Virus record (IMG/VR): IMGVR_UViG_3300032334_002567
Coordinates: 186,001-250,000 of that record
Direction: 5' to 3' (one strand)
DNA: 64,000 nt
The notes beneath the pieces are model-generated. The model saw only the letters and a list, made by a program, of their open reading frames with translations, was not told the origin of the DNA and searched no databases. The position numbers were made by a program, and so were the translations under genes. This document shows positions 2,281 to 54,274 of the stretch, piece by piece. Position 1 is the first letter of the stretch, and every line of letters starts with the position of its first letter.

Positions 2281-2308
2281 TTGCATAACGGATTTTTTTT
2301 GATAGAAT
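2281..2308 (+). promoter_or_regulatory. Sigma-70-like promoter TTGCAT-N16-TAGAAT
   Basis: Intergenic, preceded by an A/T tract, upstream of the 2360 gene. Confidence 0.55.
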
Positions 2309-2359
2309 TCTCACCATTGGTTCGGTAGATTCTGTACCTGTTTCACAAAGGATTAAATA

Positions 2360-2557
2360 ATGGCTAGAGTTAAGAAGGAAACCCAGCAGAAAGTTTCAGT
2401 TATCATGGAAAAGGCCAATAATCTTTGGCAAGAAGTCTCTCCTAAGTTAAGCGAAATTCAAAAAGAATTCCGTGAAATTGGTGATGGTGCCACCACTCGT
2501 AACAAGAAGCTTGAAAGAGTCATCAAATATTTTTCGAGTTTTGTTGACAAGAACTGA
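2360..2557 (+). CDS. Hypothetical protein
   Basis: AAGGA RBS, 65-aa ORF. Confidence 0.65.
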   Translation: MARVKKETQQKVSVIMEKANNLWQEVSPKLSEIQKEFREIGDGATTRNKKLERVIKYFSSFVDKN

Positions 2558-2568
2558 GCTATAAAAAA

Positions 2569-3039
2569 ATGCCTAAAGGCAAAAAAGTTTGTAGCGAATG
2601 CGGCCAAGAAACTGGTGCCCGTGCCACCCAGTGTCGGTGCGGGCACCAGTTTTCTAGGCCCAAGCAAACGCCAATTGCTGTAGAAAAAACTTCTGTTGAA
2701 GTCAAAGAAACTGTTCAACCAACAGAAACAACGGCTTTTAAGAAGGCCAGCATATCTTGTCCAATAATTTATACTCCTTCTGGAAAGTGCCCTCACAAGC
2801 CAGAAGGATATCAAAAAAATTGGCCCGAAGGTCCGGTCGAGGAAAACGTTGTTGTAGAATGGGCGTTAAGGGTTTTGAACTCTGGTGCAGGTAGACGTTC
2901 TTATACTGTACACGCTGTTCAATACTGGGCTCATGAATTTTGGGATATAAATGGAGAAAATTGTGGTAAAGAATATAAAAGAGTTTGTGATATAATATTA
3001 AGAACTCTTTGCCCCCAGCAAGAATCTTCTTTTGAGTAA
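2569..3039 (+). CDS. Hypothetical protein with N-terminal zinc ribbon
   Basis: CSEC...CRCGHQF. Confidence 0.7.
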   Translation: MPKGKKVCSECGQETGARATQCRCGHQFSRPKQTPIAVEKTSVEVKETVQPTETTAFKKASISCPIIYTPSGKCPHKPEGYQKNWPEGPVEENVVVEWALRVLNSGAGRRSYTVHAVQYWAHEFWDINGENCGKEYKRVCDIILRTLCPQQESSFE

Positions 3040-3041
3040 AA

Positions 3042-3902
3042 ATGGGAAGTCCACATCATCAAGATTTTTTTATAGAGCCCTTTACCAGACCAAAAGGTCC
3101 AAATGGACCTTATATCAACGATCCCGGCTACGAAGTTCCTCCTAAAAAAATTGTTGTTGTGCCTTTTAAGGTTGAAAGCTCTACTCCAGTTTCTGGGTTC
3201 GATGGTTACTACAAAGAAATTGTAGAGCCTTTAGCTGGTAAGCTTAGAAGAGATTGGTTTGTTGCTCACTCATACTATTGTTTACCAATCATGGTAGGCA
3301 ATCAGTATGGTTTTTTAGTGAAATCTCTTAGAGATTATGAGCTATTCTGGGACGGCACAGAAAGAGATGCTCAAATTAATTTTCTAAATAATGATAACGC
3401 TGATAGACAGAACGTGCTAGCAAGATTCGGCTCAGGCGTTGTAAGCATACAAAACTTTTTTGCTCTAAAAACTGCTCCTGGCATTAACCTAATGACAATT
3501 CAACCCCCTAATTTGTTTATTCCGGGTTGTGTAGCCATGACAGCAATTATTGAAACAGATCAAATAAGAAGAGACTTTGCCTTCAGCTTTAAAATCACGA
3601 TTCCAAACTACAAAATAACGGTTAGAAAAGGAGATCCTGTTGGAGCTTTTATTCCTATTCAAAGATATTTTGTAGATGACTTTGAATTATCTATGGTTAA
3701 TGAAGTTTTTGAAGATAAAAGTCTATACGAAAATGAAATCGCTGACTCCTTTGAATTATCTAGACAAAGAGCCAATGAAGATAGAACTAAGCCGCATGAG
3801 TGCGGGAGGAAATACTTTAACGGAGAACATGCCTTTGGACAGAAATTTGATGACCACCAAAGGAATGTGCCTTCTAGATGCCCTATGCGTCAAACGCCCT
3901 AA
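3042..3902 (+). CDS. DUF6065-like protein (beta-rich, often near 2OG oxygenases)
   Basis: YYCLPIMVGNQYG, PPN, IETD and KGDP motifs recalled for this family. Confidence 0.65.
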   Translation: MGSPHHQDFFIEPFTRPKGPNGPYINDPGYEVPPKKIVVVPFKVESSTPVSGFDGYYKEIVEPLAGKLRRDWFVAHSYYCLPIMVGNQYGFLVKSLRDYELFWDGTERDAQINFLNNDNADRQNVLARFGSGVVSIQNFFALKTAPGINLMTIQPPNLFIPGCVAMTAIIETDQIRRDFAFSFKITIPNYKITVRKGDPVGAFIPIQRYFVDDFELSMVNEVFEDKSLYENEIADSFELSRQRANEDRTKPHECGRKYFNGEHAFGQKFDDHQRNVPSRCPMRQTP

Positions 3903-3909
3903 TTTAAAA

Positions 3910-4086
3910 TTAGTGGGCGTCAGACTTGCTTAGTTCACTTCTTAATACCGTTATTTCCTTTTCAGCTTCGATTCCAATTCTAACTTTGTTTTTGTTGTCG
4001 ATTCTAACAACGGTAATCCTAATATCGTCCATATTTGGGCCTCTTAGGATGATTGTTTCGTCTTTCTTTCTGCTTAATACTAGCAT
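3910..4086 (-). CDS. csrA: Carbon storage regulator CsrA/RsmA (58 aa; missing from the ORF track)
   Basis: Manual translation MLVLSRKKDETIILRGPNMDDIRITVVRIDNKNKVRIGIEAEKEITVLRSELSKSDAH; GGAAGGGA RBS. Confidence 0.92.
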   Translation of the reverse strand: MLVLSRKKDETIILRGPNMDDIRITVVRIDNKNKVRIGIEAEKEITVLRSELSKSDAH

Positions 4087-4207
4087 TTTTTAGTTCCCTT
4101 CCTATTATTTTCTAAGTGTCCATCAAGCCTGCCGATATCAAAATAGTGTGGCTCTTTTGAATTTTTTAGACCCAAAGAAGAAAAAATAGGTTTTTTCATT
4201 TTGGTAC

Positions 4208-4235
4208 TTTACAATCGTATTTTTCAGTCTACACT
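4208..4235 (+). promoter_or_regulatory. Sigma-70-like promoter TTTACA-N16-TACACT
   Basis: Same hexamers and spacer as at 12800; followed by an imperfect 5'-UTR hairpin at about 4250-4286. Confidence 0.65.
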
Positions 4236-4323
4236 TATTTCTAGAAGTGATGGTTTTCGAACAAACGGCCCTGTTCGGAAAATCATATGAAAGAAAATGG
4301 GCCTTGTTTAGAAGGTAAGTCAG

Positions 4324-4725
4324 ATGACAGTTTCTAAGGAAATCAATAGTCTTACGAAGGGCTTCCAGAAGTTTTTGAAGACCCTTGTTGCTTCTTCGAC
4401 AACTAGTGTCAAGACCAAAAAGGGCACTAAAGCCAAGGCCAAGGTTGTCAAGGTCAAGGCAAAGAGAACGAAGAGAGTCGCTGGTGAAGTTGGCGGTCCA
4501 GGCCGTCCTTCTGGTGGCTTGAAGGAAAAGTTGGTTGATATTATTAAGGATGGTCCGATGACCGAGCAGGATATTGCTAAGAAGCTCCTGTCGGATAAGG
4601 AAAAGTATGGTTGGAATGAGAACGAGAGCACTCTCTATCAGACGCTTCGCAAGTGTGTCAAGGAAAAGCTTCTTGTTGAAGGCGATGATCGTGATAGGAA
4701 AACCAAGACCTATCAGGTCGCCTGA
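4324..4725 (+). CDS. Lys-rich basic protein with probable C-terminal winged-helix (DNA-binding)
   Basis: K-rich N-half; GPMTEQDIAKKL...LYQTLRKCVKEKLL...TYQV pattern; biased codon use. Confidence 0.6.
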   Translation: MTVSKEINSLTKGFQKFLKTLVASSTTSVKTKKGTKAKAKVVKVKAKRTKRVAGEVGGPGRPSGGLKEKLVDIIKDGPMTEQDIAKKLLSDKEKYGWNENESTLYQTLRKCVKEKLLVEGDDRDRKTKTYQVA

Positions 4726-4775
4726 TTTTTGTCCTTTAGAATCCCCATTACGGGGTAGAAAAGTGAGTTGTGTAA

Positions 4776-5174
4776 ATGTCTGCTACTAAGTCCGCTGCCG
4801 CCCCTACCAAGGCCGGTGTTGCTCGTGAGTTTATGAAGAAGATCGGTGCCCTCACCAAAAACCCACCAGAAGGTTGGTTGAAAAAGGTTGAAGATCACCT
4901 CAAGGAAAAGGGTTTTACTCTCGCCAAGTCCTCCGATGTGCAGATCTACACGATTCGAAGCAAGGCGATGGGGAAAACCAAGAAGGCGGCTAAGAAGAGT
5001 GCCGTTCCTAGCAAAGGCAAGGGGAAGATCAAGTCTAAGCCCAAGGCCCAGCACGGAACGATCCACACCTTTTCTGTAGATGATCTCGCTTCTGCAAAGA
5101 AGTACGCTGATGGTGCTGGCGGTGTTATGAGGAGCATCGAAACCCTCAAGGCTCTGCAACGCCTGATGTCTTGA
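4776..5174 (+). CDS. Lys/Ala-rich histone-like basic protein
   Basis: KTKKAAKKSAVPSKGKGKIKSKPK tract. Confidence 0.6.
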   Translation: MSATKSAAAPTKAGVAREFMKKIGALTKNPPEGWLKKVEDHLKEKGFTLAKSSDVQIYTIRSKAMGKTKKAAKKSAVPSKGKGKIKSKPKAQHGTIHTFSVDDLASAKKYADGAGGVMRSIETLKALQRLMS

Positions 5175-5204
5175 TCCTCAAACAAAACTCAATTGAGTTT
5201 TTAT

Positions 5205-5237
5205 AACCCCGCTGGCAATACCAGCGGGGTTTTTTTT
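5205..5237 (+). terminator. Rho-independent terminator
   Basis: AACCCCGCTGG/CCAGCGGGGTT stem plus T run between convergent genes; perfect 18-bp palindrome at 5184-5201 just upstream. Confidence 0.9.
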
Positions 5238-5242
5238 ATTTA

Positions 5243-6331
5243 CTACTCAAAATTCTCTAAAAAACTAATCCACTTTTTGCCCACCACATTGATGTTGAAA
5301 TTTTCTCTAATATAAGAAGGCCCAGAATTTTTATAGGACAGTTTAATATCAGGGTTTTTTTCTAGGTATTTTATCTTTTCCACAATGTTCTTCGTTGAAC
5401 CCATTAATGGTTCCTCGGCAACTTTATCCTTTAAAAACTTTGAAGGGTTAACGCCTTTTGGAAAATCAACCCAAACAACATTGTTCTCATAGTATTCTGG
5501 CAATGCACCTAACCTATAAGTTACAACCACTAGACCCATAGCAACAGCTTCAGCAACCGCACAAGAAAATGTATCCTGATAAACTAGTTTTCCATGAGTA
5601 AAGCTAGGAAATATAAAATATTCACTTGTAATCAATTCTCTAAAAAGACTTATTTTGTCCAAACCTTTTTCTATGTCAAGATAATCAAAAGACTTAAACT
5701 TTGATTTGTCCCACCCGAGCTCCTCCACAGCTTTTAGAGCAACATCACCGCCCCTAGACCATTGTGCATGAAATATTGTTTTATTAGGAATACGGACCAG
5801 ATTCTCTTTTTCTACTTCTTCAATTATATCTGTCATTACGGGGTTAGGGATCACAACAGAAAACAGTTTTTGCACAACACTTTTAATGCCCCGCTCAGTC
5901 TCTTTTGTGTGCCCTAGCTCCCAGTTAGAAACATGAACCATTCCAACATCTAAAGAATTTTCTTTAGCGAATTCAATTAATTCTCTAATTCCATACATCC
6001 AAGCTAAATGGAACCAGTAAATAACCGCTTTTTTAACTTTAAACGGCAAACCTTTGTAACCTTCAAACCACAGGGAGTTTATAAGAATATCAAATTCTTC
6101 GTTTTTGATTTCAGAAAAGTCTAGATTTGTATAGCGAACCCCTCGACAAATTCCTTTTCCACCACACTCTAAAGCGATAGTTACATCATGACCACAAGAG
6201 GCAAGATACTCGGCAATTAAAATACAGCTTGAATCTGTGCCAGAAGAACTTGCACCACCATGCCGAATTGTATCTCCATTTAAAATGTTACTTCTAGGTT
6301 TGTTTCCTACTAATAAGAATAATACCTTCAT
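5243..6331 (-). CDS. GT-B fold glycosyltransferase (GT4-like)
   Basis: YFIFPS...DTFSCAVAEAVAMGLVVVTYRLGALPE. Confidence 0.8.
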   Translation of the reverse strand: MKVLFLLVGNKPRSNILNGDTIRHGGASSSGTDSSCILIAEYLASCGHDVTIALECGGKGICRGVRYTNLDFSEIKNEEFDILINSLWFEGYKGLPFKVKKAVIYWFHLAWMYGIRELIEFAKENSLDVGMVHVSNWELGHTKETERGIKSVVQKLFSVVIPNPVMTDIIEEVEKENLVRIPNKTIFHAQWSRGGDVALKAVEELGWDKSKFKSFDYLDIEKGLDKISLFRELITSEYFIFPSFTHGKLVYQDTFSCAVAEAVAMGLVVVTYRLGALPEYYENNVVWVDFPKGVNPSKFLKDKVAEEPLMGSTKNIVEKIKYLEKNPDIKLSYKNSGPSYIRENFNINVVGKKWISFLENFE

Positions 6332-6344
6332 GCACCTCCATTTG

Positions 6345-6917
6345 CTATTTATTTGATTTTGTTGACTCCATTAGATCCTTAACATTCTCTACACAGAAAC
6401 CATGCTCTCCACGTTCAATAAATTCGTATATAACGCCTGTTAATTCGCTAGGCTTGGTAAACACTTGAGTTAGACCGGGACATGTCAATGGAGCTTCTGA
6501 GGCAAATTCTGCGTATCCTTTTTCTTTCCATTCTTTCATTGTCTTTTCAACGCTCTCTACCTGATATGCTAAATGATGTATTCCTCCGACTCCATCTCTT
6601 CTATCAACCCATTTTCCAACGATAGAATCAGGTGTCCCATCTGATACGAATATCTCTGGTGGGAGGTGGAATTCAGCAAATAAGCTTGAGTCTATTTCTA
6701 ATTCATTAAAAGAGTCCCCAACATATTGTCGAATCAGCCAATGAAGCTTTTTAACTTTTGGTTTTTCTGAAGGTTCTAGTGCAATGCACTTGGCAGTGGT
6801 TCCGTCCGCAAAATTAATGTCAAATTCTGTTTGTACCCTATACCCAAGAGCATTCATAAAAAATTGAGCTGTCTTTTTGCGATCTTTTACCCTGTAAGCG
6901 ATGTGGTCTAGACGCAT
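6345..6917 (-). CDS. VOC-family metalloenzyme resembling the HPPD C-terminal domain
   Basis: LDHIAY, GIHHLAY, QVFTKP, YEFIER (His/His/Glu metal triad). Confidence 0.75.
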   Translation of the reverse strand: MRLDHIAYRVKDRKKTAQFFMNALGYRVQTEFDINFADGTTAKCIALEPSEKPKVKKLHWLIRQYVGDSFNELEIDSSLFAEFHLPPEIFVSDGTPDSIVGKWVDRRDGVGGIHHLAYQVESVEKTMKEWKEKGYAEFASEAPLTCPGLTQVFTKPSELTGVIYEFIERGEHGFCVENVKDLMESTKSNK

Positions 6918-6929
6918 AGCAAACCTCCT

Positions 6930-7118
6930 TTAGTAGATTTTATTTGTTTTATTCACTATCTCTTTTAAACCCATTAACATGTAGTGAACAGCCAAAGCTG
7001 TTACGCATAGGTAAGAAATACCTTCTGTTATCCTATACGCATTTAAGAGAGTTATTCCAAAATAAGTACAAAATAATAGAGGCTGAATTGAAAATATAAA
7101 AAGTAGTATTTTTGACAT
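6930..7118 (-). CDS. Small membrane protein
   Basis: Two hydrophobic segments; TATATA 4 nt before the ATG. Confidence 0.55.
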   Translation of the reverse strand: MSKILLFIFSIQPLLFCTYFGITLLNAYRITEGISYLCVTALAVHYMLMGLKEIVNKTNKIY

Positions 7119-7154
7119 ACCCTATATATTCAGCCAATAAAGGATGTTAATGTA

Positions 7155-7826
7155 TTAAATTTTGATTGGCTTTTTTAACTGTGACTGCCAAAATTCTAGG
7201 TCCCGAGTATAGGTGTCCCCAATATCTGTCTTGTTTAAGTGAACCTGAATGGCCCCGAGGGGATATACGACATATTTTTGATTTAGAGACCGTGATAAAC
7301 AGCAGTCATAATGCATCGTAGGATTTATATTTAATAAAATATCAAATGCACGATAATTAAGAATAAATGCATGAGAGCAAACAGTAACAGAAGCTTTAAC
7401 TAAATTGGGTGTAATTAGGTCTAAACTCTCATCTGCTATTGTTGCCCCTAAAAATAATATTTCCCAATCTTTAATTTTTGAAATTTGTTCAATAGCAGCT
7501 TCTGTTGGATTTAATGGTGGTTGATTGTCTGCGTAAATTCTACAATCGTCTTCAAGCACTAAGATATTATTCATACCTTGTGCCTTAGCTTTTCTTACTA
7601 TCTCCATATGAGCAGCGGCATTACCAGCACTATACTGCTCAATTTTGTACCCCCCGTCAGCGAGTGGCAAATATCCTAGCTCTGCTGGCGTTTTTCCGTC
7701 TATACGTACAACTTTGGACTCTAAATTAAGTTCTTTTAAGTGTGCTAGTATAGCACTATTTTTATCTGTTCGATGTGGTAAATTTATATAAAATATACAA
7801 TCAACAAAATCTATGAGTTTAAACAT
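7155..7826 (-). CDS. Glycosyltransferase family 25-like
   Basis: YINLPHRTD, LVLEDD, LFLG, CSHAF; start re-set to 7826 because the longer ORF overlaps the tRNA. Confidence 0.8.
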   Translation of the reverse strand: MFKLIDFVDCIFYINLPHRTDKNSAILAHLKELNLESKVVRIDGKTPAELGYLPLADGGYKIEQYSAGNAAAHMEIVRKAKAQGMNNILVLEDDCRIYADNQPPLNPTEAAIEQISKIKDWEILFLGATIADESLDLITPNLVKASVTVCSHAFILNYRAFDILLNINPTMHYDCCLSRSLNQKYVVYPLGAIQVHLNKTDIGDTYTRDLEFWQSQLKKPIKI

Positions 7827-7849
7827 TTCAAACAAGAGCAACTGAAAAA

Positions 7850-7923
7850 TGGGCCATCTAGGACTTGAACCTAGGACTTCCAAATTATGAGTTTGGCACT
7901 CTAACCAGCTGAGTTAATGGCCC
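7850..7923 (-). tRNA. tRNA-Ile2 (anticodon CAU, lysidine type); no encoded CCA
   Basis: Full cloverleaf GGGCCAT...ATGGCCC-A; anticodon loop CTCATAA; C4-G69 and C5-G68 TilS determinants; directly downstream of tilS. Confidence 0.9.
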
Positions 7924-7947
7924 CTTGTTCAGTTGCTCTTGCACATC

Positions 7948-8592: not shown

Positions 8593-8668
8593 TCTTAATT
8601 TTGAATTGGGTGTTTCGACTATTTAAAATTTGCTTTTCAATTGATCGTATCTTGTTTTAGGTTTTGGG

Positions 8669-8696
8669 TTTACAACCACTTAGATCGTGCTAAAAT
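8669..8696 (+). promoter_or_regulatory. Sigma-70-like promoter TTTACA-N16-TAAAAT with extended -10 TG
   Basis: Upstream of clpX. Confidence 0.65.
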
Positions 8697-8771
8697 ACAG
8701 TCAGTGTATCAATGTTGTGTCTTTGCGTCAAGGAAAGACGAATCAATTTTAAAATAATAAGGAGTGTTAAG

Positions 8772-10031: not shown

Positions 10032-10044
10032 CTACTTTAAAGTT

Positions 10045-11063: not shown

Positions 11064-11076
11064 AGGTGCTCTATTA

Positions 11077-11445: not shown

Positions 11446-11510
11446 AGTTTAATTTAGTATTTACTGACTGTTTTATTTAATATAAACTTCTTTTAACCGG
11501 AGAGAAGTTT

Positions 11511-12389
11511 ATGACTGATAGAATTCTAAACGCATCTAATTATCTTTCTAGGGTTTTTGAGCACCCAGATTTTCAAAATCCTAAAAAATCAATTGAGATA
11601 ACTAAAGACATAGATTTTGAATTGCGACCAAATTCTATGCTTTGCTATGATTCTCCCCTTTTATCTTTTGAGCAAGAGCAACATCTTTTTAGAAAGATGA
11701 ATTATTTTAAATATAAAGCAAAGACCTTGCTAAAAAACAATCAAAAGGTTTCAACTAGAAGATTGATTAAAATAGAAGATTTGATTGCTAGGAGTAAGAA
11801 GGTTAGAAACCAAATAGCAGAATCTAATTTTCGTTTAGCAACTCAACTGCTGAGATGTGACATTTCTTTTTATCAGCAGAATAGCTTGGTTGATTCTTTG
11901 TTGTCAGATGCTTATTTTGATGTTTTAAAGGCAGTAGATTACTTTAATTGGACTTTGGGTAATAAATTCAGCACTTATGCAACTTGGGTTTTGAAAAAGA
12001 ACTTTTTTCGTGATTCTAAAGACAAAAAGAAACATGCTGACAAAACTATGCGATTAGATGACATAAGCCTTAACATTGAAGAATCTACTGGAAGTCTTAC
12101 AGAAGACGAGCTTCAATACTCAAGTCAAAAAAAGCTGGTGCAGAGTTTGCTTCAGCTATTGGGAAATGGAGACGGATCTACTGATAATCGAAGACAGGTT
12201 TTTGTGCTTGAAAATTACTTTGGATTGAATGGTTATGAAGAGCAAACTTTAGAGAAAATAAGTCTTAAATTAGGAGTTACCAAAGAGAGGGTAAGGCAGC
12301 TTAAGGAAAAAGGGCTAGAATGGATAAGATTTAAAGTAAAACAAATGAAAATAGATCAGGATATTGGATTAGAAAGTTTTCGTTACTAA
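11511..12389 (+). CDS. RNA polymerase sigma-70 family factor
   Basis: PLLSFEQE (1.2), ESNFRL, GNKFSTYATW (2.3-2.4), TLEKISLKLGVTKERVRQL (4.2). Confidence 0.92.
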   Translation: MTDRILNASNYLSRVFEHPDFQNPKKSIEITKDIDFELRPNSMLCYDSPLLSFEQEQHLFRKMNYFKYKAKTLLKNNQKVSTRRLIKIEDLIARSKKVRNQIAESNFRLATQLLRCDISFYQQNSLVDSLLSDAYFDVLKAVDYFNWTLGNKFSTYATWVLKKNFFRDSKDKKKHADKTMRLDDISLNIEESTGSLTEDELQYSSQKKLVQSLLQLLGNGDGSTDNRRQVFVLENYFGLNGYEEQTLEKISLKLGVTKERVRQLKEKGLEWIRFKVKQMKIDQDIGLESFRY

Positions 12390-12429
12390 TTGACCTTGAT
12401 TGAAAATAGATTTCAGGTAAGATTCGCCT

Positions 12430-12750: not shown

Positions 12751-12760
12751 TGATAAAAAA

Positions 12761-12827
12761 ATTGTACCCTATAAAAGTGTTGCAGTGAGGCACGACAGAT
12801 TTACAAACGCATTTGTCGTGCTACACT
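12761..12827 (+). promoter_or_regulatory. Complex early promoter: shared 22-bp box, TTTACA-N16-TACACT and overlapping inverted repeat
   Basis: ATTGTACCCTATAAAAGTGTTG at 12761-12782; IR GCACGACAGAT/ATTTGTCGTGC at 12790-12821. Confidence 0.65.
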
Positions 12828-12922
12828 AATACAAGCGAGAGAAAGTTGCCCTCTTGGCCCCACAATGTGTGATCGGCCTCGATTTATAGGGCTTTTTACT
12901 CTCATAGTGGAGATTTTTAACC

Positions 12923-25639: not shown

Positions 25640-25739
25640 CCTATTGAGCATTTTTAAATTAGGTTTCATATTGCCAATTTCAATTTAGACCTAGACTAAT
25701 TTTAAGTTTGTCCAAATGCAAAATTTAGACGGCAAATTG

Positions 25740-25786
25740 ATTGTACCCTATAAGGGTGTTGACACTAGGATTGAAGGTGGTATGCT
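25740..25786 (+). promoter_or_regulatory. Shared 22-bp box overlapping TTGACA-N16-TATGCT promoter
   Basis: ATTGTACCCTATAAGGGTGTTG, 20/22 identical to the box at 12761. Confidence 0.7.
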
Positions 25787-25842: not shown

Positions 25843-26859
25843 ATGCTAAAGAGCCAGATCAACCATCGTGACCTTTCCATCGAAGAAAAGCTGTCTTTGA
25901 AGCAAAAGCTTCTTGGTGTTACGGCTCTTTTGACGAAGTGGTCAGCATACTACCCAGACCATCCAATGACAGAATTGAAGAATGAAATTTTTCGTGGCGT
26001 GAAGAATCCTTTCGGCAAAATTCCAGAAGCCGAGCTTGAACAGTTTTGGCAAGATCAAAAAGTCATCATGGATTTTCAGACAAAGATACTCCCAGAATTT
26101 GGAGTGACTGCCGAGATTGCTTTGTTAGAGTCATTCATGAAGGCTTGCTACAAAGAAGCAAGACGATGGGCCAGGCGTGTTTCCTCTTCATTGAATCTAA
26201 TTTTTGAAGATGCTTTTGAAGACTTGTTGCAAGACGCCTACAAATCTGTTCTTAGTTCGATGTATTATTTCACAGAATCTGACAAAGAAGTTTCTACCTA
26301 TGTGATTGGGTCTTTAAGAAAAAGTTTAGAGAGAGCCACCAGATACGATTACTGTAAACTTTCTCCAGTAAACCCAGACGATTTAAAGTTGCTTTACACA
26401 TACAACAAAGAAAGCATGGCAGAGGGCAGGACTTTTGAAGAAATTGTTTCAATAATGGGACTGAGTGAAGAACAGGTCGCAATTTTGTCCGATGTAATTC
26501 GTCCCGTAAAAAGGGAAGCAATCGTAACAAGCCATGACAAGGAAGTTAGAACGCTTGAACTTGTGCCATGCAAGAGAAACGATTCAGAAAGTGAATGTCT
26601 TGAGACCTTTTCTTTAATTAAGAGTTTTCTAGACCCTTCGTATGATAGTGTTTTGAATTTGACTGAAGAAGAAAAGAAGGTAATCAGGGCTGGTATGGAT
26701 AACAATTTTGCTAGAGGCTGGCAGTCTAGCTTTGCTGCTACTTCCTTGAGTCCCAACACAGGCAGACCTTATACCCGTCAAAGAGTTGGACAGTTGTTTG
26801 ATTCTGCGTCCTCAAAAATCAAGCCCTTGCTGCTTCAGAAGGCTAGAGGTGTTGCATGA
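25843..26859 (+). CDS. Divergent sigma-70-like factor
   Basis: EDLLQDA...VSTYVIGSLR (region 2), TFEEIVSIMGLSEEQV (region 3), LTEEEKKVI...TRQRVGQL (region 4). Confidence 0.7.
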   Translation: MLKSQINHRDLSIEEKLSLKQKLLGVTALLTKWSAYYPDHPMTELKNEIFRGVKNPFGKIPEAELEQFWQDQKVIMDFQTKILPEFGVTAEIALLESFMKACYKEARRWARRVSSSLNLIFEDAFEDLLQDAYKSVLSSMYYFTESDKEVSTYVIGSLRKSLERATRYDYCKLSPVNPDDLKLLYTYNKESMAEGRTFEEIVSIMGLSEEQVAILSDVIRPVKREAIVTSHDKEVRTLELVPCKRNDSESECLETFSLIKSFLDPSYDSVLNLTEEEKKVIRAGMDNNFARGWQSSFAATSLSPNTGRPYTRQRVGQLFDSASSKIKPLLLQKARGVA

Positions 26860-29895: not shown

Positions 29896-29923
29896 TTTAC
29901 AAGCTACTCTTTCAAGCTATAAT
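29896..29923 (+). promoter_or_regulatory. Sigma-70-like promoter TTTACA-N16-TATAAT
   Basis: Intergenic, near-consensus hexamers. Confidence 0.7.
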
Positions 29924-45032: not shown

Positions 45033-45126
45033 ATTTGTCTCCTGTAGAATTCACTTTTATATATCAAAACTTGACAAAAAAAGCAAATTAGGCTATCATT
45101 CACTGATCTTGCCAAGGAAATATCAC

Positions 45127-45585: not shown

Positions 45586-46197
45586 ATGGGCAAAGTTACA
45601 TTAATTGGCGACTTGCACGGCAAATATAAAAGATATCACGAAATAATTCGTGAGAAGGATCGCTTTCCATACACCGTACAGTTGGGCGATTTTGGTTTTG
45701 ATTATGAAACTCTTAAAAACGTTGATTCAAAAAATCATGTTTTCGTTGGAGGTAACCACGACAACTACGAAAAGGTTAAAACCGTCCCCAATTATCTTGG
45801 TGATTTCGGACACATGGTCAACTTTAACGGTTTAGACTTTTTCTATTATCGTGGAGCTTACAGTATCGACAGACAGTATCGCACTATAGGAATTGATTGG
45901 TGGGCAGAAGAACAAGTGAGCGTTGAAGGCTTTATGGAAGCTAGAGAACTTTATCGTGGGATAAAGCCTAGAATTATGCTTACTCATGATTGCCCCGAAA
46001 AAATAGCATATCTGATGTTGGAGCCCGGATGTAGAATATACCAAAATATGACGGGCTGGGCGTTACAAGAATTGCTCAATATTCACGAGCCAGAATACTG
46101 GATTTTTGGTCACTACCATCAATCTAAAACTATTAAGCATGGTAACACCACATTTATTTGCCTTGATGAACTAGAAACTTATGATATAATTGCATAA
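45586..46197 (+). CDS. Calcineurin-like metallophosphoesterase
   Basis: GDLHG, LGDFG, GNHD, THDCP, FGHYH. Confidence 0.92.
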   Translation: MGKVTLIGDLHGKYKRYHEIIREKDRFPYTVQLGDFGFDYETLKNVDSKNHVFVGGNHDNYEKVKTVPNYLGDFGHMVNFNGLDFFYYRGAYSIDRQYRTIGIDWWAEEQVSVEGFMEARELYRGIKPRIMLTHDCPEKIAYLMLEPGCRIYQNMTGWALQELLNIHEPEYWIFGHYHQSKTIKHGNTTFICLDELETYDIIA

Positions 46198-48601: not shown

Positions 48602-48770
48602 AAATACAAAATATTCCAAATTGGGAAAAAGATGATATAATTGCTTTGATAAACCATGATGGTGGAGTTATATCTTTTACACCCCCAAAGAATATGCCAG
48701 AAGGATGTAGTTGGGAAAAGATTCAAGAAAATGTAGTATAATTACTCAAATTAGTGCCCGAAATTCTACT

Positions 48771-50649
48771 ATGACTAAGCTAGATCAATTTATTTCAGAC
48801 TGTCCTAATTGCATTTCTCCTTGGAAATGTAATGGTCCTCATTTAGAAAAAGCATACGAGAACATTTATCGTAGCAAAGATGGGTATTACATGTTGTCTA
48901 AGACCACAAATATGTGGGTTTTTGTGGCTCACGAAGGCGAATACACAGCACAGAATTTGCTTGACATTGCAAACACACTCAGTATACTGAGTGAAGGATG
49001 TCACAAAGTTTAAATTTCAAAATTGAAAGTCAAAACATGAACGCTGAACTTGAACAAAAGCTTTTTGAAGAACACCCAGATTTGTTCCAAAACCGTCACA
49101 AATCTAGTCAAGAAAGCTGTATGGTCTGGGGCATAGAATTTGGTGATGGATGGTATGACCTCATAAAGAATGTGTGTGTTGAAATAACACGACATGAAAA
49201 AAATGTGACTAATGAAAAAGACGCTTATAGGTATAAAAAAGACTACGAACAGGTTAGATTTGATCAAACAAAACAAAAATTTGGTGGTTTAAGAATTTAT
49301 TACTCTGGTGGTGACGACCATATCAGAGGTGTAATTGATATGGCAGAAGCAATGAGCTACTGTATCTGTGAGGATTGTGGTAATAAAGGCACACCTAATA
49401 AAGGTGGTTGGATTACCACTCTTTGTGAAAATTGTAGGAGCAGAACAACGAAATAGATAATTGAGAACACATGAAAATTCAAATTAATAACGCAGAAATA
49501 ATAGATCTAACCACACCAGAACTATATGATTGTTGGCTTATAGATAAAGAAAGCTTTCATCATTGGTTAACTAGAAAGTCTAACCTAAAAATACCTCTAG
49601 AAGCGGATACTGGGACTTGGTTTTTCTCAGACAAAATATCTGGGGATAGAGTGTTTACTGTTGATTTAAAAGATTATATCGAATGGTGGAATCCTCTTGT
49701 TGCTTATATAAAAGCTCAACGTGTAGATAGCTACAAAATAATTGAAGAATCAATAGTTAATATAGAGTTTGAGACATATTTGAATAATTACCCAGAAGGA
49801 TATTGGGACTAAAACAACAGATTGGTGGAATTATGAACAAAAACATTATGAAAAAATGGATTAAAGCTCTTCGATCTGGCAAGTATAAGCAAGGCAGAGG
49901 AACTTTAAAACATTATGACACTAACGCACAAGCACGGCATTGTTGCTTAGGCGTTCTTTGTGAGCTGTATAACGATCAAATGAGAAAAGATGAAAAGAAA
50001 ACTTTGTCTGAAAAAACTCTTCATCATGATTCCTTTACTCATGGAGTAGTTGAATTTAGTAGAAACAGGGATTATTTGCCAAAAAAGGTTGTTGATTGGG
50101 CTGATATGAATGATAATCTTGGTTATTTTTATGATGAAAAAAATAAAGATAATTGCTTGTCTGATATGAACGATGACGGCAAAAAATTTAAAACAATAGC
50201 GAACATTATTGAGAAAAATTGGGAAAATATATGAAAAACATGATTGAATCTGAAGACTCTGATATCCGCCTACATAACCCAACATTAAAAGAATTGTCGA
50301 GAGCATGTGAGGATTTATGCCATAAATTGAGAGTACCATATGATCCGTATAAAATACGAGTCACTACAGACTATGGCGCCAAGGTGGTAATTTATTATGA
50401 TGGTGGTGGTGAGTTATTATGATAACAAAAACTAAAGACGTTCAACAACAATTGCTCTATCTTATCAGCAAAATAGAAAAGATAGAGGATTTGTGTAAAG
50501 AAGAAACTCTGGAACCATTCGGACCTTATCTTGACAGTATAGACTTTATGAAAGTGCTTGAGGGTAGTAAAAAGCTCTCATACTCAGATGGATTAGAGGC
50601 GGGGATATCTCACATGGCAAGTAAAATATTAAGGATACTCTACTCATGA
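48771..50649 (+). CDS. Six small hypothetical/conserved phage genes (48771, 49037, 49471, 49833, 50219, 50419)
   Basis: 49037 has GDGW...KQKFGGLR...CEDCG; 49833 has KWIKALRSGKYKQG; TTGACA-N16-TATACT at 48961. Confidence 0.65.
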
Positions 50650-50741
50650 ATTTACAGATTTTATATTTCATATTAATGGTAATGGAGAAGAATGGTATCA
50701 AATAAAGCTAAACAAATTCAACTATTGGAGTGTGTAGAAGT

Positions 50742-52199
50742 ATGAGAAAAGAAGAATTAGCCGTTGACCACATCATGTTGTTTGGTGGACTAGTTATATT
50801 TACAGCAGTATTATGTGCTCTTGTTCTTAATCCTATTCATAAAAAGAATGTAGAAAAGTTAAAATCAAACAAGCTAATAAACAGACAGAAAATTACCATC
50901 GACAATATTGTTGGTACCGTAGAAAGCATTCATCCTTGGGGACGTACAGAAATTGTTCCCATGAAGAGTATCGAATTAGAATATTTTGAATATGATGATC
51001 AATGGGTTATGTATGGTGATGTTGTTCAACCAGTTGGTCGCAAAGATTATTTTATGCCGGTCATGAAGGGCAGACTAAATCTTGATGTTAAAGAAATGAC
51101 TCAAACATGGATTGAATATGGTAGCTATGCTACTGGTCTTGATAAGGAAGCAGAAACTTATGAAGATTTTAGATTAGCTCATATCAAAGTCAAGCAGGGT
51201 AAAATTATTGATATACAATACTCTCATTATAGATTACTATCAAATAATACTTGGAGCATAATAGCGTCGTGGAAAGCAAAAATATAGAAGTTAAAGTGAT
51301 TGAATGGTTTGCGGAGGTGCGCAAGCCGCTGACCGTATTATGTTTTTTAATTTTGTGCGTCCCTATACCTGTTTTGGGTGAGAATTATATTTCACTTAAA
51401 AAAGATTTAGTAGTTACTGTTGACCAAGACTATATCGATTTACCTGTAATTTCGATTGATAGCGAAAAAATAGAAAGCAGAATTGGATACGGCATTTATT
51501 TTGAGTCTTGGTCATCTAAATCTTATGTTTGCCGTATTCATCTAAACAGAAATATAGATAAAATTAAAAAAGACACCGTAATTGTTTTAAATGGTAAATA
51601 TGAGATTGAAAAGACTTCTTCTGGTATGTTTGCACACAAGTTCTTCGTAAAAGAGCCGAAAGAAATAAGCTATATAGCCTGCGGTGTTTATGTAGACTAC
51701 TATAGAAGTCTTTTGGGCGAAAAAGTGCGACTGATATCCAGAACTTTTCCAGATGATTTTAAATAAACAGTATTTGACTTTATGCTTGCTTAATTGTATA
51801 CTAAGCACTTTAATTCACGTCAAAAAGGAGTTTCAAATGAAAAGATTGTTTTTTCTTTCTTTTATTGTTGGATGTGGAGTTTCCTCTAAGCCCGCCAAAG
51901 AAATTATAGTCGAGACTCAGCCGACAGTTGTAGTAGAGCAATCTGTTGTAGAGAATGAAACTCCAGATTTGCAAAGGATTGCTTATGATATTGGATACAA
52001 AAGAGGATACAAAAATTTTACGAGTCAGATGAACCTTGAGCCAACTGTTGAGTCTAAAGAATTTGCTTACACGGTTAAAAAGGAAGACGAAGCAATTTTA
52101 GAAACAGAAGCATATCAAGATATTATGATGAAAGGCTATGTAGATGGCTATCATAAAGCGGGTGAATCGATGGTACAAGGTTGCCCAAGAAAGAATTAA
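50742..52199 (+). CDS. Three membrane/secreted hypothetical proteins (50742-51287, 51251-51766, 51837-52199 lipoprotein-like)
   Basis: N-terminal hydrophobic segments; IVGC lipobox in the last. Confidence 0.55.
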
Positions 52200-52201
52200 C
52201 A

Positions 52202-52960
52202 ATGTTAAGAAGCCGAATTAATTATTGGGGTTGTTCTAAATTTGCCGATTGGATTCGGGGCGAAAAGAAACCATTCGCTCTTGAATGGGGCAAGTGGGAA
52301 GAGTGGAAAGAAGAGCAAAGCAGAAAGAGACCAATTCGTTTTTGGATATCAGATACTCTGTTGAATAAAATCCAAAATTTTATCTTTTATCCTTCTGATG
52401 TTTGGAATGAAATTAGACACTACTATTACAACAGGTTTGTTTCTAAAACTCATTATCTCAAAACAGGATTGAAACCCGGAAGATACCATGAACTAGATGA
52501 AAGAATAATTCATGGATTGTTCAACGAGTTAGTTGATTTCGTGGAATGCGAACAAGCATGGATGAACCACATCTGTAGTGAAAACAAAAACTTTAAGTTC
52601 AAAAAAGGCAGATGCCCAGAAGCAGGAATAGATTATCTTAATTGGGCCATTTCACTTAAAAATGACGAAGATAGTGGTTTTGAAAAGGGAGATAAAGATT
52701 ATGGCACACCAAGTCGCCAATCCATAGCAGCACAGAAAATTCTTGATATTTATAATTGGTGGAAGTTTGAACGCCCTAACAGAAAAGACCCTATGGAAGT
52801 CAGTGGTTGGAGTGATTATTATGACAACAAAGGCAACTACACAAAAAAACAACAATCAGCAATTCTAAAAAAGCTTGATAAGGTTGAAGTATCATACAAT
52901 CAAGAAGACGAAGACATGATGATAGAGCTAATAAAGATTCGCAGCAGTTTGTGGACTTAA
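52202..52960 (+). CDS. Conserved phage hypothetical protein
   Basis: LFNELVDFVE...YNWW...RP...LIKIRSSLWT. Confidence 0.7.
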   Translation: MLRSRINYWGCSKFADWIRGEKKPFALEWGKWEEWKEEQSRKRPIRFWISDTLLNKIQNFIFYPSDVWNEIRHYYYNRFVSKTHYLKTGLKPGRYHELDERIIHGLFNELVDFVECEQAWMNHICSENKNFKFKKGRCPEAGIDYLNWAISLKNDEDSGFEKGDKDYGTPSRQSIAAQKILDIYNWWKFERPNRKDPMEVSGWSDYYDNKGNYTKKQQSAILKKLDKVEVSYNQEDEDMMIELIKIRSSLWT

Positions 52961-54123
52961 ACTAAACTTTCTTCAATAAGCTCTGGACACTCTAATCCCG
53001 TCCATATATCTTTATTTCCTTCGACTCTGCTTCTCATTAGTTTAATTCTTTCTCTGCGAATCTTCTCCATCAAATCTCCAGAAGAAGCAACATTTTTACT
53101 AATTATTTCTTGCTCTCTTTTTCTCAATCCATTGATCTTTTTAACTTCAATGCTTGAAATCTTTATTTTTAACCTAACTAAATTCGATATAACTCTTCGG
53201 TTGTTTACAGGAAACTTTGCATTAGCCTTGTTCCAAAGTATCATTAGATCGTTCGGTGTCTTGCCAGCCCAGTTGCTCAAAAGAAAACTCTTGAATCTTT
53301 CCTGAACATCCATTGGCAATCCGACTATTTTTAATTTTTTTGCGAGACCAAGTCTGCAAAGTTTCTTTTGAATTGCATTTAAAGTATAGGGCAATATCTT
53401 TAAGTTAAAAACTACACGAGCAGATTTGCCTTGATTGTGTAAATCATGCAATAAGTTAATATGCTCAATAGGCCATTCTGGGCGACTTGGTTTTGTCTCA
53501 ACCAATCCCAATCGAATCATCTTGCTCTTAATTGCACTTTTGGATCTATTTGAGCGAACTTTACCACACTTTAAATTTTCTATTTCTTCATTTGACCAAA
53601 CTTTCGTTCTCTTTAATCCCATCCTATAAAGTTTTAGTTTAACGCTTTCTTTACTACGGCCGGGAACTTGAGGAATAATACCATCCGCATCAGAATAGTT
53701 TTTTAAGATTTCTAACTCTGACTTTTTCCATTTTCTGCCCTTCAGCAGGCCAAGTGAAGCCATTTTTAATCTAACTGCATAGTCAGTTCTACCCGCTATT
53801 TGTGGTATTTTTCCTTGGCTGTTTCGGATGATGGCTACTTCTTCATCCGTCCAATATTGGCTTTTGATTAGCTTTAAACGATACATTCTTCTTTTAATAG
53901 AAGCTTGGCTTTTTCCCTTTATTTCTGGGATTATTCCTTTAGACGCTGCCTCTTTAAGAATTTCAATTTCTTTATTGTTCCAAACTCTTGAGTTAAGCAA
54001 CCCAAGACGTAGCATTTTATTTCTTACATATCTTCTTTCTCGTCCTTTAATATTCGGGACAATATCTTTAGAGCTGGCTCTTTCGAGGATTTTTATTTCC
54101 TCTACAGTCCATTTCGCCACCAT
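52957..54123 (-). CDS. Tandem Myb/SANT-like repeat protein
   Basis: About six W[TNSK]xxExxIL...GR[ST]...K...LGL units; GGAGG RBS; TTGCAA-N16-TATACT at 54193-54166. Confidence 0.72.
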   Translation of the reverse strand: MVAKWTVEEIKILERASSKDIVPNIKGRERRYVRNKMLRLGLLNSRVWNNKEIEILKEAASKGIIPEIKGKSQASIKRRMYRLKLIKSQYWTDEEVAIIRNSQGKIPQIAGRTDYAVRLKMASLGLLKGRKWKKSELEILKNYSDADGIIPQVPGRSKESVKLKLYRMGLKRTKVWSNEEIENLKCGKVRSNRSKSAIKSKMIRLGLVETKPSRPEWPIEHINLLHDLHNQGKSARVVFNLKILPYTLNAIQKKLCRLGLAKKLKIVGLPMDVQERFKSFLLSNWAGKTPNDLMILWNKANAKFPVNNRRVISNLVRLKIKISSIEVKKINGLRKREQEIISKNVASSGDLMEKIRRERIKLMRSRVEGNKDIWTGLECPELIEESLV

Positions 54124-54274
54124 AAAACACCTCCATGCTCTTAGCGTCTACAAGTTGGAATGATTAGTATAGCAAACTAATTCTTTTTTGCAACTAATAA
54201 TATAACAAATTTTAGATTAGAATGTCTTGACTAAAGATCAATTTTTCATTATATTTGTCACCAAAGGAAAAAAT

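What the first reader, a model, noticed from the sequence alone, without database searches (positions are those of the whole stretch)
2281..54193. Putative early promoters repeatedly use a 16-bp spacer
Seen: TTGCAT/TAGAAT (2281), TTTACA/TACACT (4208, 12800), TTTACA/TAAAAT (8669), TTGATT/TAAGAT (12396), TTGACA/TATGCT (25759), TTTACA/TATAAT (29896), TTGATG/TATAAT (46163), TTGACA/TATACT (48961) and TTGCAA/TATACT (54193, minus), all N16. Only three N17 cases were noticed (1196, 45071, 51774). Known: 17 is the usual sigma-70 optimum. Inference: this reflects the host primary sigma or one of the two phage sigmas.
Basis: partly seen in the sequence, partly recalled or inferred. Interest (0 to 1): 0.6.

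Follow-up and report, generated by a model that had tools for sequence, protein, structure and literature searches.

The report
Phage promoters with 16-bp spacer
An uncultured 381-kb lake phage carries about 25 real-looking sigma-70-type promoters spaced 16 bp instead of the usual 17, and sister phages build the same promoter with 17 bp, so the spacing is inherited with the phage lineage.

Summary
All listed sites are in the sequence. Five of the ten N16 sites (4208, 8669, 12800, 29896, 54193 minus) and one N17 site (45071) belong to a statistically solid promoter family. Two sites are intermediate and five are chance-level matches.

Across the 381-kb genome, free-spacer motif discovery gives cTTTACAA, a T-tract, TGTG(C/G) and TAtA(a/c)T. 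It finds 20 intergenic sites at N16, 4-5 at N17 and about none elsewhere. A regex count gives 13 at N16 against 0.14 in shuffles. 32 of 33 sites point at a gene start. The genes behind them are non-structural and include the phage sigma genes.

The promoters are a sigma-70-type extended -10 class that resembles T4 early promoters. Relatives found through the phage's compact RpoD/RpoS-like sigma use the same boxes. The window's clade uses N16 (9:3), while the sister clade uses N17 (1:17), including at orthologous promoters.

So 16 bp is a selected, lineage-specific optimum. Whether the host primary sigma or the phage's primary-like sigma reads these promoters is not settled, because there are no RNA data and the host is unknown. 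I favour a start by host sigma with spacing tuned to the phage sigma. Two other motif classes (AATTGTACCCTA and TATATA) were found in passing.

The parts
4208..4235 (+). Class-1 promoter, TTTACA-N16-TACACT, 88 nt upstream of ORF 4324-4725 (weak PadR-like match)
   Evidence: Matrix score 12.5 nats. It is 28/28 identical in the ~90%-identical relative L171.
8669..8696 (+). Class-1 promoter, TTTACA-N16-TAAAAT with cGTGc extended -10. It heads the ClpX-like operon that ends with the phage sigma gene.
   Evidence: Score 15.0. The orthologous promoter is present upstream of the ClpX-like gene in ten relative loci. It is N16 in L171, L175, L176 and L177, and N17 in L178, L173, L200, L201 and L202.
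12800..12827 (+). Class-1 promoter, TTTACA-N16-TACACT with cGTGc, 95 nt upstream of ORF 12923-13837. It lies in tandem behind a class-2 motif.
   Evidence: Score 18.4. The tandem arrangement and the N16 spacing are kept in L171 and L175-L178, while the spacer sequence diverges.
29896..29923 (+). Class-1 promoter, TTTACA-N16-TATAAT, 34 nt upstream of ORF 29958-30272
   Evidence: Score 15.3 and 11/12 to the canonical hexamers.
54166..54193 (-). Class-1 promoter on the minus strand, TTGCAA-N16-TATACT with TTTGC extended -10, 42 nt upstream of ORF 54123-52957
   Evidence: Score 13.6 at N16. The alternative register GTTGCA-N17 scores 15.1.
25759..25786 (+). Intermediate class-1 site of the TTGACA / -13G subtype, TTGACA-N16-TATGCT. 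It lies 7 bp downstream of a class-2 motif and 56 nt upstream of the weak sigma-like ORF 25843-26859.
   Evidence: 10/12 canonical, matrix score 6.5.
48961..48988 (+). Intermediate site, TTGACA-N16-TATACT without TG. It overlaps the end of ORF 48711-49013 and lies 9 nt before ORF 48998.
   Evidence: Score 7.5. Its status is uncertain.
45071..45099 (+). Class-1 promoter with a 17-bp spacer, TTGACA-N17-TATCAT, 27 nt upstream of ORF 45127-45585
   Evidence: Score 14.2. It is one of 4-5 N17 members in the genome.
2281..2308 (+). Weak candidate, TTGCAT-N16-TAGAAT. It is intergenic, 51 nt upstream of ORF 2360-2557.
   Evidence: Score 2.6, which is chance level. It is kept at 26/28 in L171, where the -10 reads TATAAT.
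12396..12423 (+). Weak candidate, TTGATT-N16-TAAGAT, just after the sigma gene's stop
   Evidence: Score -6.1. L171 has TTGACT at the same place.
46163..46190 (+). Weak candidate, TTGATG-N16-TATAAT, overlapping the end of ORF 45586-46197
   Evidence: Score 3.8.
1196..1224 (+). Weak N17 candidate, TTGATC-N17-TAAAAT
   Evidence: Score -0.6.
51774..51802 (+). Weak N17 candidate, TTGACT-N17-TATACT
   Evidence: Score 2.9.
11511..12389 (+). Phage sigma 'w1', 292 aa: a compact primary-like (RpoD/RpoS-like) sigma-70 family protein and the last gene of the operon behind the 8669 promoter
   Evidence: Pfam r2 and r4 matches. The best NCBIfam hits are RpoS and RpoD, far below their cut-offs. A profile of the family aligns regions 1.2, 2, the start of 3.0 and 4.2 to SigA, HrdB, RpoD and RpoS chains. 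The AlphaFold model (pLDDT 80) best matches primary sigmas. Region 4.2 reads KERVRQ against RERIRQ in E. coli.
25843..26859 (+). Weak sigma-like ORF 'w2', 338 aa
   Evidence: It matches only TIGR02937 at E = 3e-6, below the cut-off, and has no Pfam hit.
12760..12771 (+). Class-2 motif AATTGTACCCTA, 28 bp upstream of the 12800 promoter's -35 hexamer
25739..25750 (+). Class-2 motif (GATTGTACCCTA), 8 bp upstream of the 25759 site's -35 hexamer

Best explanation
These are genuine sigma-70-type promoters of one phage-specific design: a -35 box TTTACA(A) (less often TTGACA), a T-rich distal spacer, an extended -10 of the TGTGn type, and a -10 box TAtA(a/c)T.

They drive non-structural genes, including the phage's own sigma genes. 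They are read by the bacterial core RNA polymerase carrying a primary-type sigma.

The 16-bp spacer is a selected, heritable optimum of this phage's clade. The sister clade keeps the same boxes at 17 bp.

My preferred mechanism is as follows. The host primary sigma fires these promoters at the onset of infection, because 16 bp with a TG motif is within its working range. This makes the phage's compact RpoD/RpoS-like sigma, which then takes over the same promoters. The spacing, together with -33T and the -13 base, is tuned to that phage sigma.

Shown: the motif, its statistics, its orientation, its conservation and the clade-specific spacing. Inferred: promoter activity, early timing, and above all which sigma reads them.
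For: Motif and spacing:
- all show the N16 peak: 30 against 9.7 +/- 3.2, regex 13 against 0.14, and 64% of the EM posterior (18.1 of 28.4 expected sites) at N16 under a uniform prior.
- Invariant T-12, A-11 and T-7, with T-15 and G-14 in 17-19 of 20 sites.
- 32 of 33 sites face a gene start (binomial p = 8e-9).

Footprinting in relatives:
- The boxes and the spacing are kept while the spacers diverge, upstream of the ClpX-like gene and of the gene after sigma.

Clade structure:
- The sigma tree puts all N16-rich lineages in one clade with 100/100 support.
- A regex not trained on this genome gives N16:N17 = 9:3 in clade-A relatives and 1:17 in the other clade (Fisher p = 1.3e-4).
- G002 has 9 of 10 sites at N17.

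Timing:
- Downstream genes are ClpX-like, sigma, SNF2 helicase, ligases and a phosphoesterase. No class-1 site lies in the structural block.
- Sigma genes lie behind class-1 promoters here and in L178.

- It is primary-like by profile and by fold, with a sigma-70-like -35 recognition helix.
- Class 1 is the only motif class in the genome with a -35 element.
- No phage RNA polymerase was detected.

Published background:
- The optimum for primary sigma is 17 bp. A 16-bp spacer works about as well as 17 bp in a synthetic library (PMC8695583).
Against: - There are no transcript data of any kind, so neither the start sites nor the timing are shown.
- The host is unknown, so a host RNA polymerase with an unusual optimum cannot be excluded.
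- The link between spacing and the sigma tree rests on a single split. It would look the same if host range tracked phage phylogeny.
- I found no indel or clear residue change in the phage sigma that separates the two clades.
- Characterised phage sigmas usually read promoters unlike the host's.
- Gene calls are my own rough ORF model, and the weight matrix was learned on this genome, although without a spacer term.
Confidence: 0.45

Rival explanations
1. The host primary sigma alone reads them. These would be ordinary early promoters, and the phage sigmas would serve the other motif classes. The 16-bp mode would then reflect the RNA polymerase of this clade's hosts, or a phage-made modification of it, while the sister clade infects hosts with the usual 17-bp optimum.
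For: - The boxes are close to the universal primary-sigma consensus with a TG extension.
- The sigma genes lie behind these promoters, so a holoenzyme that exists before infection must fire them.
- There are two further, idiosyncratic motif classes to which phage sigmas could be assigned.
- T4 early promoters, which the host sigma-70 reads, share TTTAC at the -35 box and a GT-rich stretch before the -10 box (PMC1524935).
- A 16-bp spacer is as strong as 17 bp on average in a synthetic E. coli library (PMC8695583).
Against: - No primary sigma is known to prefer 16 bp.
- If 16 and 17 bp were equivalent, drift should mix them. Instead each clade holds its own mode, even at orthologous promoters.
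- The clade-wide peculiarities (TTTACAA, T-tract, TGTG) persist in genomes from 33 to 48% G+C, which probably means different hosts.
- Both full-length phage sigmas keep a sigma-70-like -35 reading helix, yet classes 2 and 3 have no -35 element.
Confidence: 0.35
2. The 16-bp spacer is deliberate detuning or timing, whichever sigma reads the promoters. With near-consensus boxes plus TGTG, a 17-bp promoter would hold the polymerase too tightly. Alternatively, a 16-bp spacer suits the relaxed, newly injected DNA. One base pair less would then set promoter escape or the response to supercoiling.
For: - TGTG raises polymerase affinity but lowers output on optimally spaced promoters.
- Spacer properties shape the response to supercoiling (both points from PMC8695583).
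- The family does carry TGTG and a T-tract.
Against: - The sister clade has equally good boxes and TGTG at 17 bp.
- The same paper finds only a minor effect of spacer length on supercoiling sensitivity.
- Nothing here measures promoter strength or DNA topology.
Confidence: 0.1
3. The sites are not a functional class. The N16 sites would be chance matches in AT-rich DNA, or copies of one duplicated sequence.
For: - At low stringency, promoter-like hexamer pairs are no more frequent than in shuffles.
Against: - The excess at N16 is 6 SD for the canonical hexamer count, and 13 sites against 0.14 expected for the regex.
- There is a strand and position bias toward gene starts.
- Spacer sequences differ between sites, so they are not recent copies.
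- Orthologous sites are conserved in relatives at about 55-60% protein identity.
Confidence: 0.03

Closest known systems
Bacteriophage T4 early promoters (host sigma-70 dependent)
   Same: - They are a phage-specific, highly uniform version of the sigma-70 promoter.
- They have T instead of G at the third -35 position (GTTTAC at -36 to -31) and a GT-rich stretch just upstream of the -10 box (PMC1524935).
- There are many copies in front of non-structural genes.
   Different: - T4's numbering implies a 17-bp spacer, whereas here it is 16.
- No A/T-rich UP element is seen here (66% against a 62% background).
- The base before TTTACA is C, not G.
- This phage is not a recognisable T4 relative, and it encodes primary-like sigmas, which T4 does not.
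Extended -10 promoters with a TRTG '-16 region' (described for Bacillus subtilis and other Gram-positives; TGn in E. coli). From my own knowledge and the introduction of PMC8695583.
   Same: TGTG(C/G) lies directly before TAnnnT, with T-15 and G-14 nearly invariant.
   Different: - Those promoters keep a 17-bp mode and often have weak -35 boxes.
- Here the -35 box is strongly conserved and the mode is 16.
- The host phylum is unknown.
E. coli sigma-S (RpoS) promoters (from my own knowledge: -10 TATACT with C at -13, and more tolerance of off-optimal spacers)
   Same: - In this genome the TTTACA subtype has C at -13 in 12 of 14 sites and often TATACT.
- The phage sigma's best NCBIfam match is RpoS, only marginally ahead of RpoD.
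   Different: - The score is far below the RpoS cut-off (66 against 379 bits).
- Sigma-S promoters usually have poor -35 boxes.
- The sister clade has G at -13.
Phage sigma cascades (SPO1 gp28 and gp33/34; T4 gp55)
   Same: - A large phage without its own detected RNA polymerase carries several sigma-like genes and at least three promoter-like motif classes.
- The sigma genes lie behind the host-like class.
   Different: - The known phage sigmas read promoters unlike the host's, and they are not primary-like.
- Here the phage sigmas keep regions 1.2, 2, 3.0 and 4.2 with a sigma-70-like -35 helix.

Membership tests
Sigma-70 / SigA-type (-35 / -10) promoter | -35 hexamer resembling TTGACA | tested here: met
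   In the 20 N16 sites, T 20/20, T 19/20, T 14 or G 5 of 20, A 19/20, C 19/20 and A 20/20.
Sigma-70 / SigA-type (-35 / -10) promoter | -10 hexamer TAnnnT with A at -11 and T at -7 | tested here: met
   T-12 20/20, A-11 19/20 and T-7 20/20.
Sigma-70 / SigA-type (-35 / -10) promoter | Spacer of 17 +/- 1 bp with the mode at 17 | tested here: inconclusive
   16 bp is inside the accepted range, but the mode is 16 (20 sites) rather than 17 (4-5 sites).
Sigma-70 / SigA-type (-35 / -10) promoter | Sites lie upstream of genes and are co-oriented with them | tested here: met
   32 of 33 sites face a gene start. The median distance from the -10 box to the start codon is 81.5 nt.
Sigma-70 / SigA-type (-35 / -10) promoter | Transcription starts about 7 nt after the -10 box | not testable with these tools
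   No RNA run holds the sequence. Only DNA contig runs were found.
Extended -10 promoter | TG at -15/-14 | tested here: met
   T-15 17/20 and G-14 19/20. G-16 13/20 and T-17 11/20 give TGTG.
T4-type early promoter | TTTAC in the -35 region | tested here: met
   TTTACA in 14 of 20 sites, preceded by C rather than G. The T4 consensus is taken from PMC1524935.
T4-type early promoter | 17-bp distance between the -35 and -10 hexamers | tested here: not met
   16 bp in 20 of about 25 sites.
T4-type early promoter | A/T-rich UP element upstream of the -35 box | tested here: not met
   A+T is 66% from -64 to -37 against 62% for intergenic DNA.
Primary (group 1) or RpoS (group 2) sigma factor, for the protein at 11511-12389 | Score above the curated RpoD or RpoS family cut-offs | tested here: not met
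   66 bits against a cut-off of 379 (RpoS) and 64 against 354 (RpoD C-terminal domain).
Primary (group 1) or RpoS (group 2) sigma factor, for the protein at 11511-12389 | Regions 1.2, 2.1-2.4, 3.0 and 4.2 present, with sigma-70-like DNA-reading residues | tested here: inconclusive
   The profile alignment to SigA, HrdB and RpoD covers regions 1.2 to the start of 3.0, and region 4.2. Y430, W433, E585, R588 and Q589 equivalents are kept; Q437K, T440F and R584K differ; regions 3.1-3.2 are much shorter. The best structural matches are primary sigmas, with TM only about 0.3.
Alternative-sigma promoters with short fixed spacers (sigma-28, sigma-32, ECF) | Their own -35 and -10 sequences | tested here: not met
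   The boxes here are of the TTGACA / TATAAT type. The comparison consensus sequences come from my own knowledge.

The most novel reading that the evidence does not exclude
A clade of huge uncultured phages carries its own compact primary-like sigma together with a matched promoter design. The geometry of the pair has shifted by one base pair between sister clades (16 against 17 bp). On this reading, the spacer, -33T and the -13 base act as discriminators that make the phage sigma and promoter set partly orthogonal to host transcription.
Probability: 0.35. Interest if true: 0.65.

Novelty: new variant of a known kind. Interest (0 to 1): 0.5.

Why it matters
Spacer length is treated as a nearly fixed property of primary-sigma promoters. 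Here two sister phage lineages keep the same boxes but hold different spacer modes, even at orthologous promoters. This is a natural experiment on what sets the optimum.

Such pairs could be swapped in vitro to map the determinant. They could also serve as partly orthogonal transcription parts.

The result also gives a working transcription map for an otherwise unannotated 381-kb phage, with three motif classes.

Tried and rejected
- **First EM attempts:** one timed out, one collapsed to A/T runs when the site frequency was free, and one locked onto the much stronger AATTGTACCCTA repeat. Masking that repeat and fixing a low site prior gave the result used.
- **Near-identical DNA and sigma protein searches in cultured phages:** both found nothing. 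The SNF2 helicase found only distant hits.
- **Single-protein scans of IMG/VR:** these found no relatives. An alignment of sigma homologues was needed.
- **More distant relatives** (sigma 38-51% identical, G003-G010): they show no clear excess of the pattern over its reversed control. The promoter design is therefore documented only in the two closer clades.
- **RNA evidence:** only DNA contig runs hold the region.
- **Host:** the ClpX-like protein is closest to Planctomycetota ClpX (56-63% against 50-54% elsewhere). The scan was pattern-limited, and the phage's 36.5% G+C fits that phylum poorly. The PRPP synthetase gave no phylum signal (31-36% to five phyla). I draw no host conclusion and ran no census of host promoters.
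- **Relatives and kinship searches:** The genome search does not draw relatives for a virus record, and 'of' needs a genome handle.
- **Missing region 3.0:** a MAFFT alignment suggested a 7-residue deletion that removes the TG-reading part of region 3.0. The HMMER profile alignment shows no such gap, so I dropped the argument that the phage sigma cannot read TG.
- **Giant ORF as a virion RNA polymerase:** a 12-bit hit to the T7-type polymerase family inside the 4404-aa ORF was not supported by Pfam on the whole protein or by a PDB sequence search.
- **The 'moraphage' paper** (PMC12619734) does not describe this clade.
- **One relative** (P0030) returned no DNA.

Full report
**What the window is.** The window is bases 186001-250000 of a 381,443-bp IMG/VR virus record. 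The record has 36.5% G+C, is classed as linear and is about 79% complete by CheckV. It has no close relative among cultured phages. DNA runs that hold it come from two metagenome studies, one labelled lake water, and none is RNA. PHROG matches place a large terminase at 4.2 kb, a DNA polymerase at 136 kb and baseplate genes at 366 kb. No RNA polymerase beta, beta-prime or T7-type family was detected.

**Checking the observation.** All 13 sites are present as described. A low-stringency hexamer scan is uninformative: window 1-20000 holds 50 promoter-like sites against 52.4 in shuffles, with no N16 bias. The signal appears at higher stringency and genome-wide.
- I used a rough ORF model of my own (467 genes covering 85% of the genome).
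- Matches of at least 10/12 to TTGACA and TATAAT in intergenic DNA number 30 at N16, against 9.7 +/- 3.2 in 200 dinucleotide shuffles. They number 17 at N17 against 10.0 +/- 3.1. Coding DNA shows no peak.
- The pattern TTKACA-N-TGnTAnnnT occurs 13 times at N16, twice at N17 and never at any other spacer from 12 to 22 in intergenic DNA. Shuffles give about 0.14 per spacer.

**Unbiased motif discovery.** I ran a two-block EM started from the canonical hexamers with a fixed uniform prior over spacers 13-21, after masking an unrelated strong repeat.
- It converged on cTTTACAA and TgTGCTATA(a/c)T, with 18.1 of 28.4 expected sites at N16 and 3.7 at N17.
- Scanning both strands with the two learned blocks, with no spacer term and a threshold of 11 nats, gives intergenic counts for spacers 11..23 of 2,0,0,1,1,20,4,1,1,1,3,0,0.
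- In the 20 N16 sites, T-12 and T-7 are invariant, A-11 is 19/20, G-14 is 19/20 and T-15 is 17/20. The -35 box reads T, T, T/G (14/5), A, C, A, followed by A in 18/20. The distal spacer is T-rich. There is no A/T-rich UP element.
- 32 of 33 sites point at the next gene's start (p = 8e-9), with a median of 81.5 nt from the -10 box to the start codon.

Sites 4208, 8669, 12800, 29896 and 54193 (minus) at N16, and 45071 at N17, are strong members of the family. Sites 25759 and 48961 are intermediate. Sites 2281, 12396, 46163, 1196 and 51774 score at chance level, although 2281 and 12396 are intergenic and kept in a close relative.

**What the promoters drive.** The 8669 promoter heads an operon with a ClpX-like ATPase that ends in a sigma gene (11511-12389). 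A second full-length sigma at genome 330421-331320 has its own N16 promoter 38 nt upstream. Other downstream genes include an SNF2 helicase operon, ligases, a phosphoesterase and a PadR-like protein. No class-1 site faces the packaging and structural block at 348-381 kb and 1-16 kb. This fits an early or otherwise non-late class, but timing is inferred, not shown.

**Relatives.**
- The sigma at 11511-12389 has hundreds of homologues on metagenomic contigs of up to 673 kb.
- I fetched loci from an alignment-based scan of IMG/VR and from contig look-ups. They are syntenic, with a CsrA homologue, the ClpX-like gene, a GGACT-domain gene and the sigma gene in the same order.
- The same promoter design is present in them.
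- In a ~90%-identical relative (L171), the three promoters in range are kept at N16.
- The promoter upstream of the ClpX-like gene is recognisable in ten relative loci, with diverged spacer sequence. It is N16 in the window, L171, L175, L176 and L177. It is N17 in L178, L173, L200, L201 and L202.
- Upstream of the gene that follows sigma, a tandem of the TTGTACCCTA motif and a TTTACA-N16 promoter is kept in six lineages.

**Clade structure of the spacer.**
- A maximum-likelihood tree of the sigma proteins puts the window's phage, L171, L175-L178 and G001 in one clade with 100/100 support. L173, L200-L202 and G002 fall outside it.
- The regex was not trained on this genome. Relatives inside the window's clade give N16:N17 = 9:3 in 87 kb. 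The other clade gives 1:17, plus one N18, in 100 kb (Fisher p = 1.3e-4).
- A whole-record scan of G002 gives nine N17 and one N18. G001 gives four N16 and two N17.
- More distant relatives show no clear signal.
- The 16-bp mode is therefore a clade trait, held at orthologous promoters, and not a general feature of the design.

**Who reads them.** The phage sigma is a compact primary-like protein.
- Its best NCBIfam matches are RpoS and RpoD, far below their cut-offs.
- A profile of the family aligns regions 1.2, 2.1-2.4, the start of 3.0 and 4.2 to SigA, HrdB, RpoD and RpoS chains.
- An AlphaFold model (pLDDT 80) finds primary sigmas as its best structural matches.
- Against E. coli sigma-70, the -35 reading helix is KERVRQ where E. 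coli has RERIRQ. The melting residues Y430 and W433 are kept. The -12 readers differ (Q437K, T440F). Regions 3.1-3.2 are much shorter.

Arguments for the host sigma:
- The boxes are canonical.
- The sigma genes lie behind these promoters.
- T4 early promoters, which the host reads, share TTTAC and the GT-rich stretch (PMC1524935).

Arguments for the phage sigma:
- It is built to read a TTGACA-like -35 box, and class 1 is the only motif class with one.
- The optimum known for primary sigma is 17 bp (PMC8695583), yet each phage clade holds its own mode.

I cannot separate the two readings. My preferred model is a start by host sigma followed by takeover by the phage sigma, at about 0.45. Host sigma alone stands at about 0.35.

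**A subdivision inside the N16 set.** TTTACA sites mostly carry C at -13 and often TATACT. TTGACA-like sites mostly carry G at -13 (12:2 against 1:5, Fisher p = 0.007). Across the genome, TTGACA is equally enriched at N16 and N17 (11 and 10, background about 5). TTTACA is enriched only at N16 (21 against about 12). This could mean two readers, but the numbers are small.

**Other motif classes.** AATTGTACCCTA occurs 74 times in intergenic DNA, 69 of them on the plus strand. Nearly all copies lie at 272-323 kb, in front of small genes and tRNAs, and none has a -35 partner. A palindromic TATATA is enriched upstream of genes (ATATATA occurs 33 times against 4.1 expected). It sits in the divergent intergenic regions of the packaging module.

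**Limits.**
- There are no transcripts and the host is unknown.
- The gene calls are my own.
- Relatives are sampled mostly as 10-21 kb loci.
- The clade contrast is one evolutionary event.

**Verdict.** The finding is a new variant of a known kind of promoter, of moderate interest.

Noticed in passing
window 12760-12771 and 25739-25750; genome 271.9-322.7 kb (about 70 further copies): A very strong single-block repeat with consensus A-a-a-n-t-AATTGTACCCTA. There are 74 intergenic copies, 69 of them on the plus strand, about 33 nt before a Shine-Dalgarno sequence of small genes and before tRNA genes. It has no -35 partner. It is conserved in relatives L175-L178. It is a candidate phage-specific promoter class, and its TACCCT core fits the TAnnnT pattern.
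   Followed up: partly
genome 4132, 8230, 15131 and about 40 other upstream regions; in the window e.g. 619-624, 20482-20487, 45058-45063: A palindromic TATATA motif 20-75 nt upstream of start codons. ATATATA occurs in 33 upstream regions against 4.1 expected. It includes the divergent intergenic regions around the large terminase gene. It is a possible late promoter class, reminiscent of T4's TATAAATA.
   Followed up: partly
genome 330421-331320 (-); window 25843-26859 (+); genome 162412-162702 (+): Further sigma-like genes: a second full-length primary-like sigma (region 4.2 reads SKERIRQ), a 338-aa ORF with only a sub-threshold sigma-70 region-2 match, and a 96-aa ORF that is a FliA/WhiG-like region 2 alone.
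   Followed up: partly
the 20 N16 sites genome-wide (window members 4208, 8669, 12800, 29896 against 25759): The -35 type goes with the -13 base. TTTACA sites have C at -13 and often TATACT, while TTGACA-like sites have G at -13 (Fisher p = 0.007). The sister clade combines TTTACA with G at -13. This may mark two readers.
   Followed up: partly
window 8772-10031 (+): A ClpX-like AAA+ ATPase with a zinc finger. Its closest bacterial homologues in a pattern-limited scan are Planctomycetota (56-63% identity against 50-54% elsewhere). This is a weak host hint that fits poorly with the phage's 36.5% G+C.
   Followed up: partly
genome 348024-361238 (+): A single 4404-aa ORF next to the baseplate genes. 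A 12-bit sub-threshold hit to the T7-type RNA polymerase family was not supported by Pfam or by a PDB sequence search.
   Followed up: partly
window 1251-2258 (+), 3910-4086 (-), 40185-41420 (+): Host-like accessory genes: a PRPP synthetase homologue and a CsrA homologue (families read from the syntenic relative L170/L171), and a tRNA nucleotidyltransferase / poly(A) polymerase head domain.
   Followed up: no
window 7850-7923 (-) and 61246-61319 (+): tRNA-Met (CAT) and tRNA-Gly (TCC) genes.
   Followed up: no
window 5205-5231: An 11-bp G+C-rich hairpin followed by a T run, between the convergent genes 4776-5174 (+) and 5243-6331 (-). It is a likely terminator. Terminator-like sites in window 1-20000 are twice the shuffle expectation (29 against 14.5).
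   Followed up: no
relatives L173, L200, L201, L202 (downstream of sigma); L178 101-1261: The N17 clade carries WGR plus PARP-domain proteins and RNA ligases next to the sigma gene. The PARP domain recalls T4's ADP-ribosylation of RNA polymerase, but this was not examined. L178 carries a Cas12f/TnpB-like gene.
   Followed up: no
genome 379.0-381.4 kb (outside the window): Tandem 15-nt repeats of the GGTGGTATAGTTACA type run through several minus-strand ORFs at the right end of the record.
   Followed up: no
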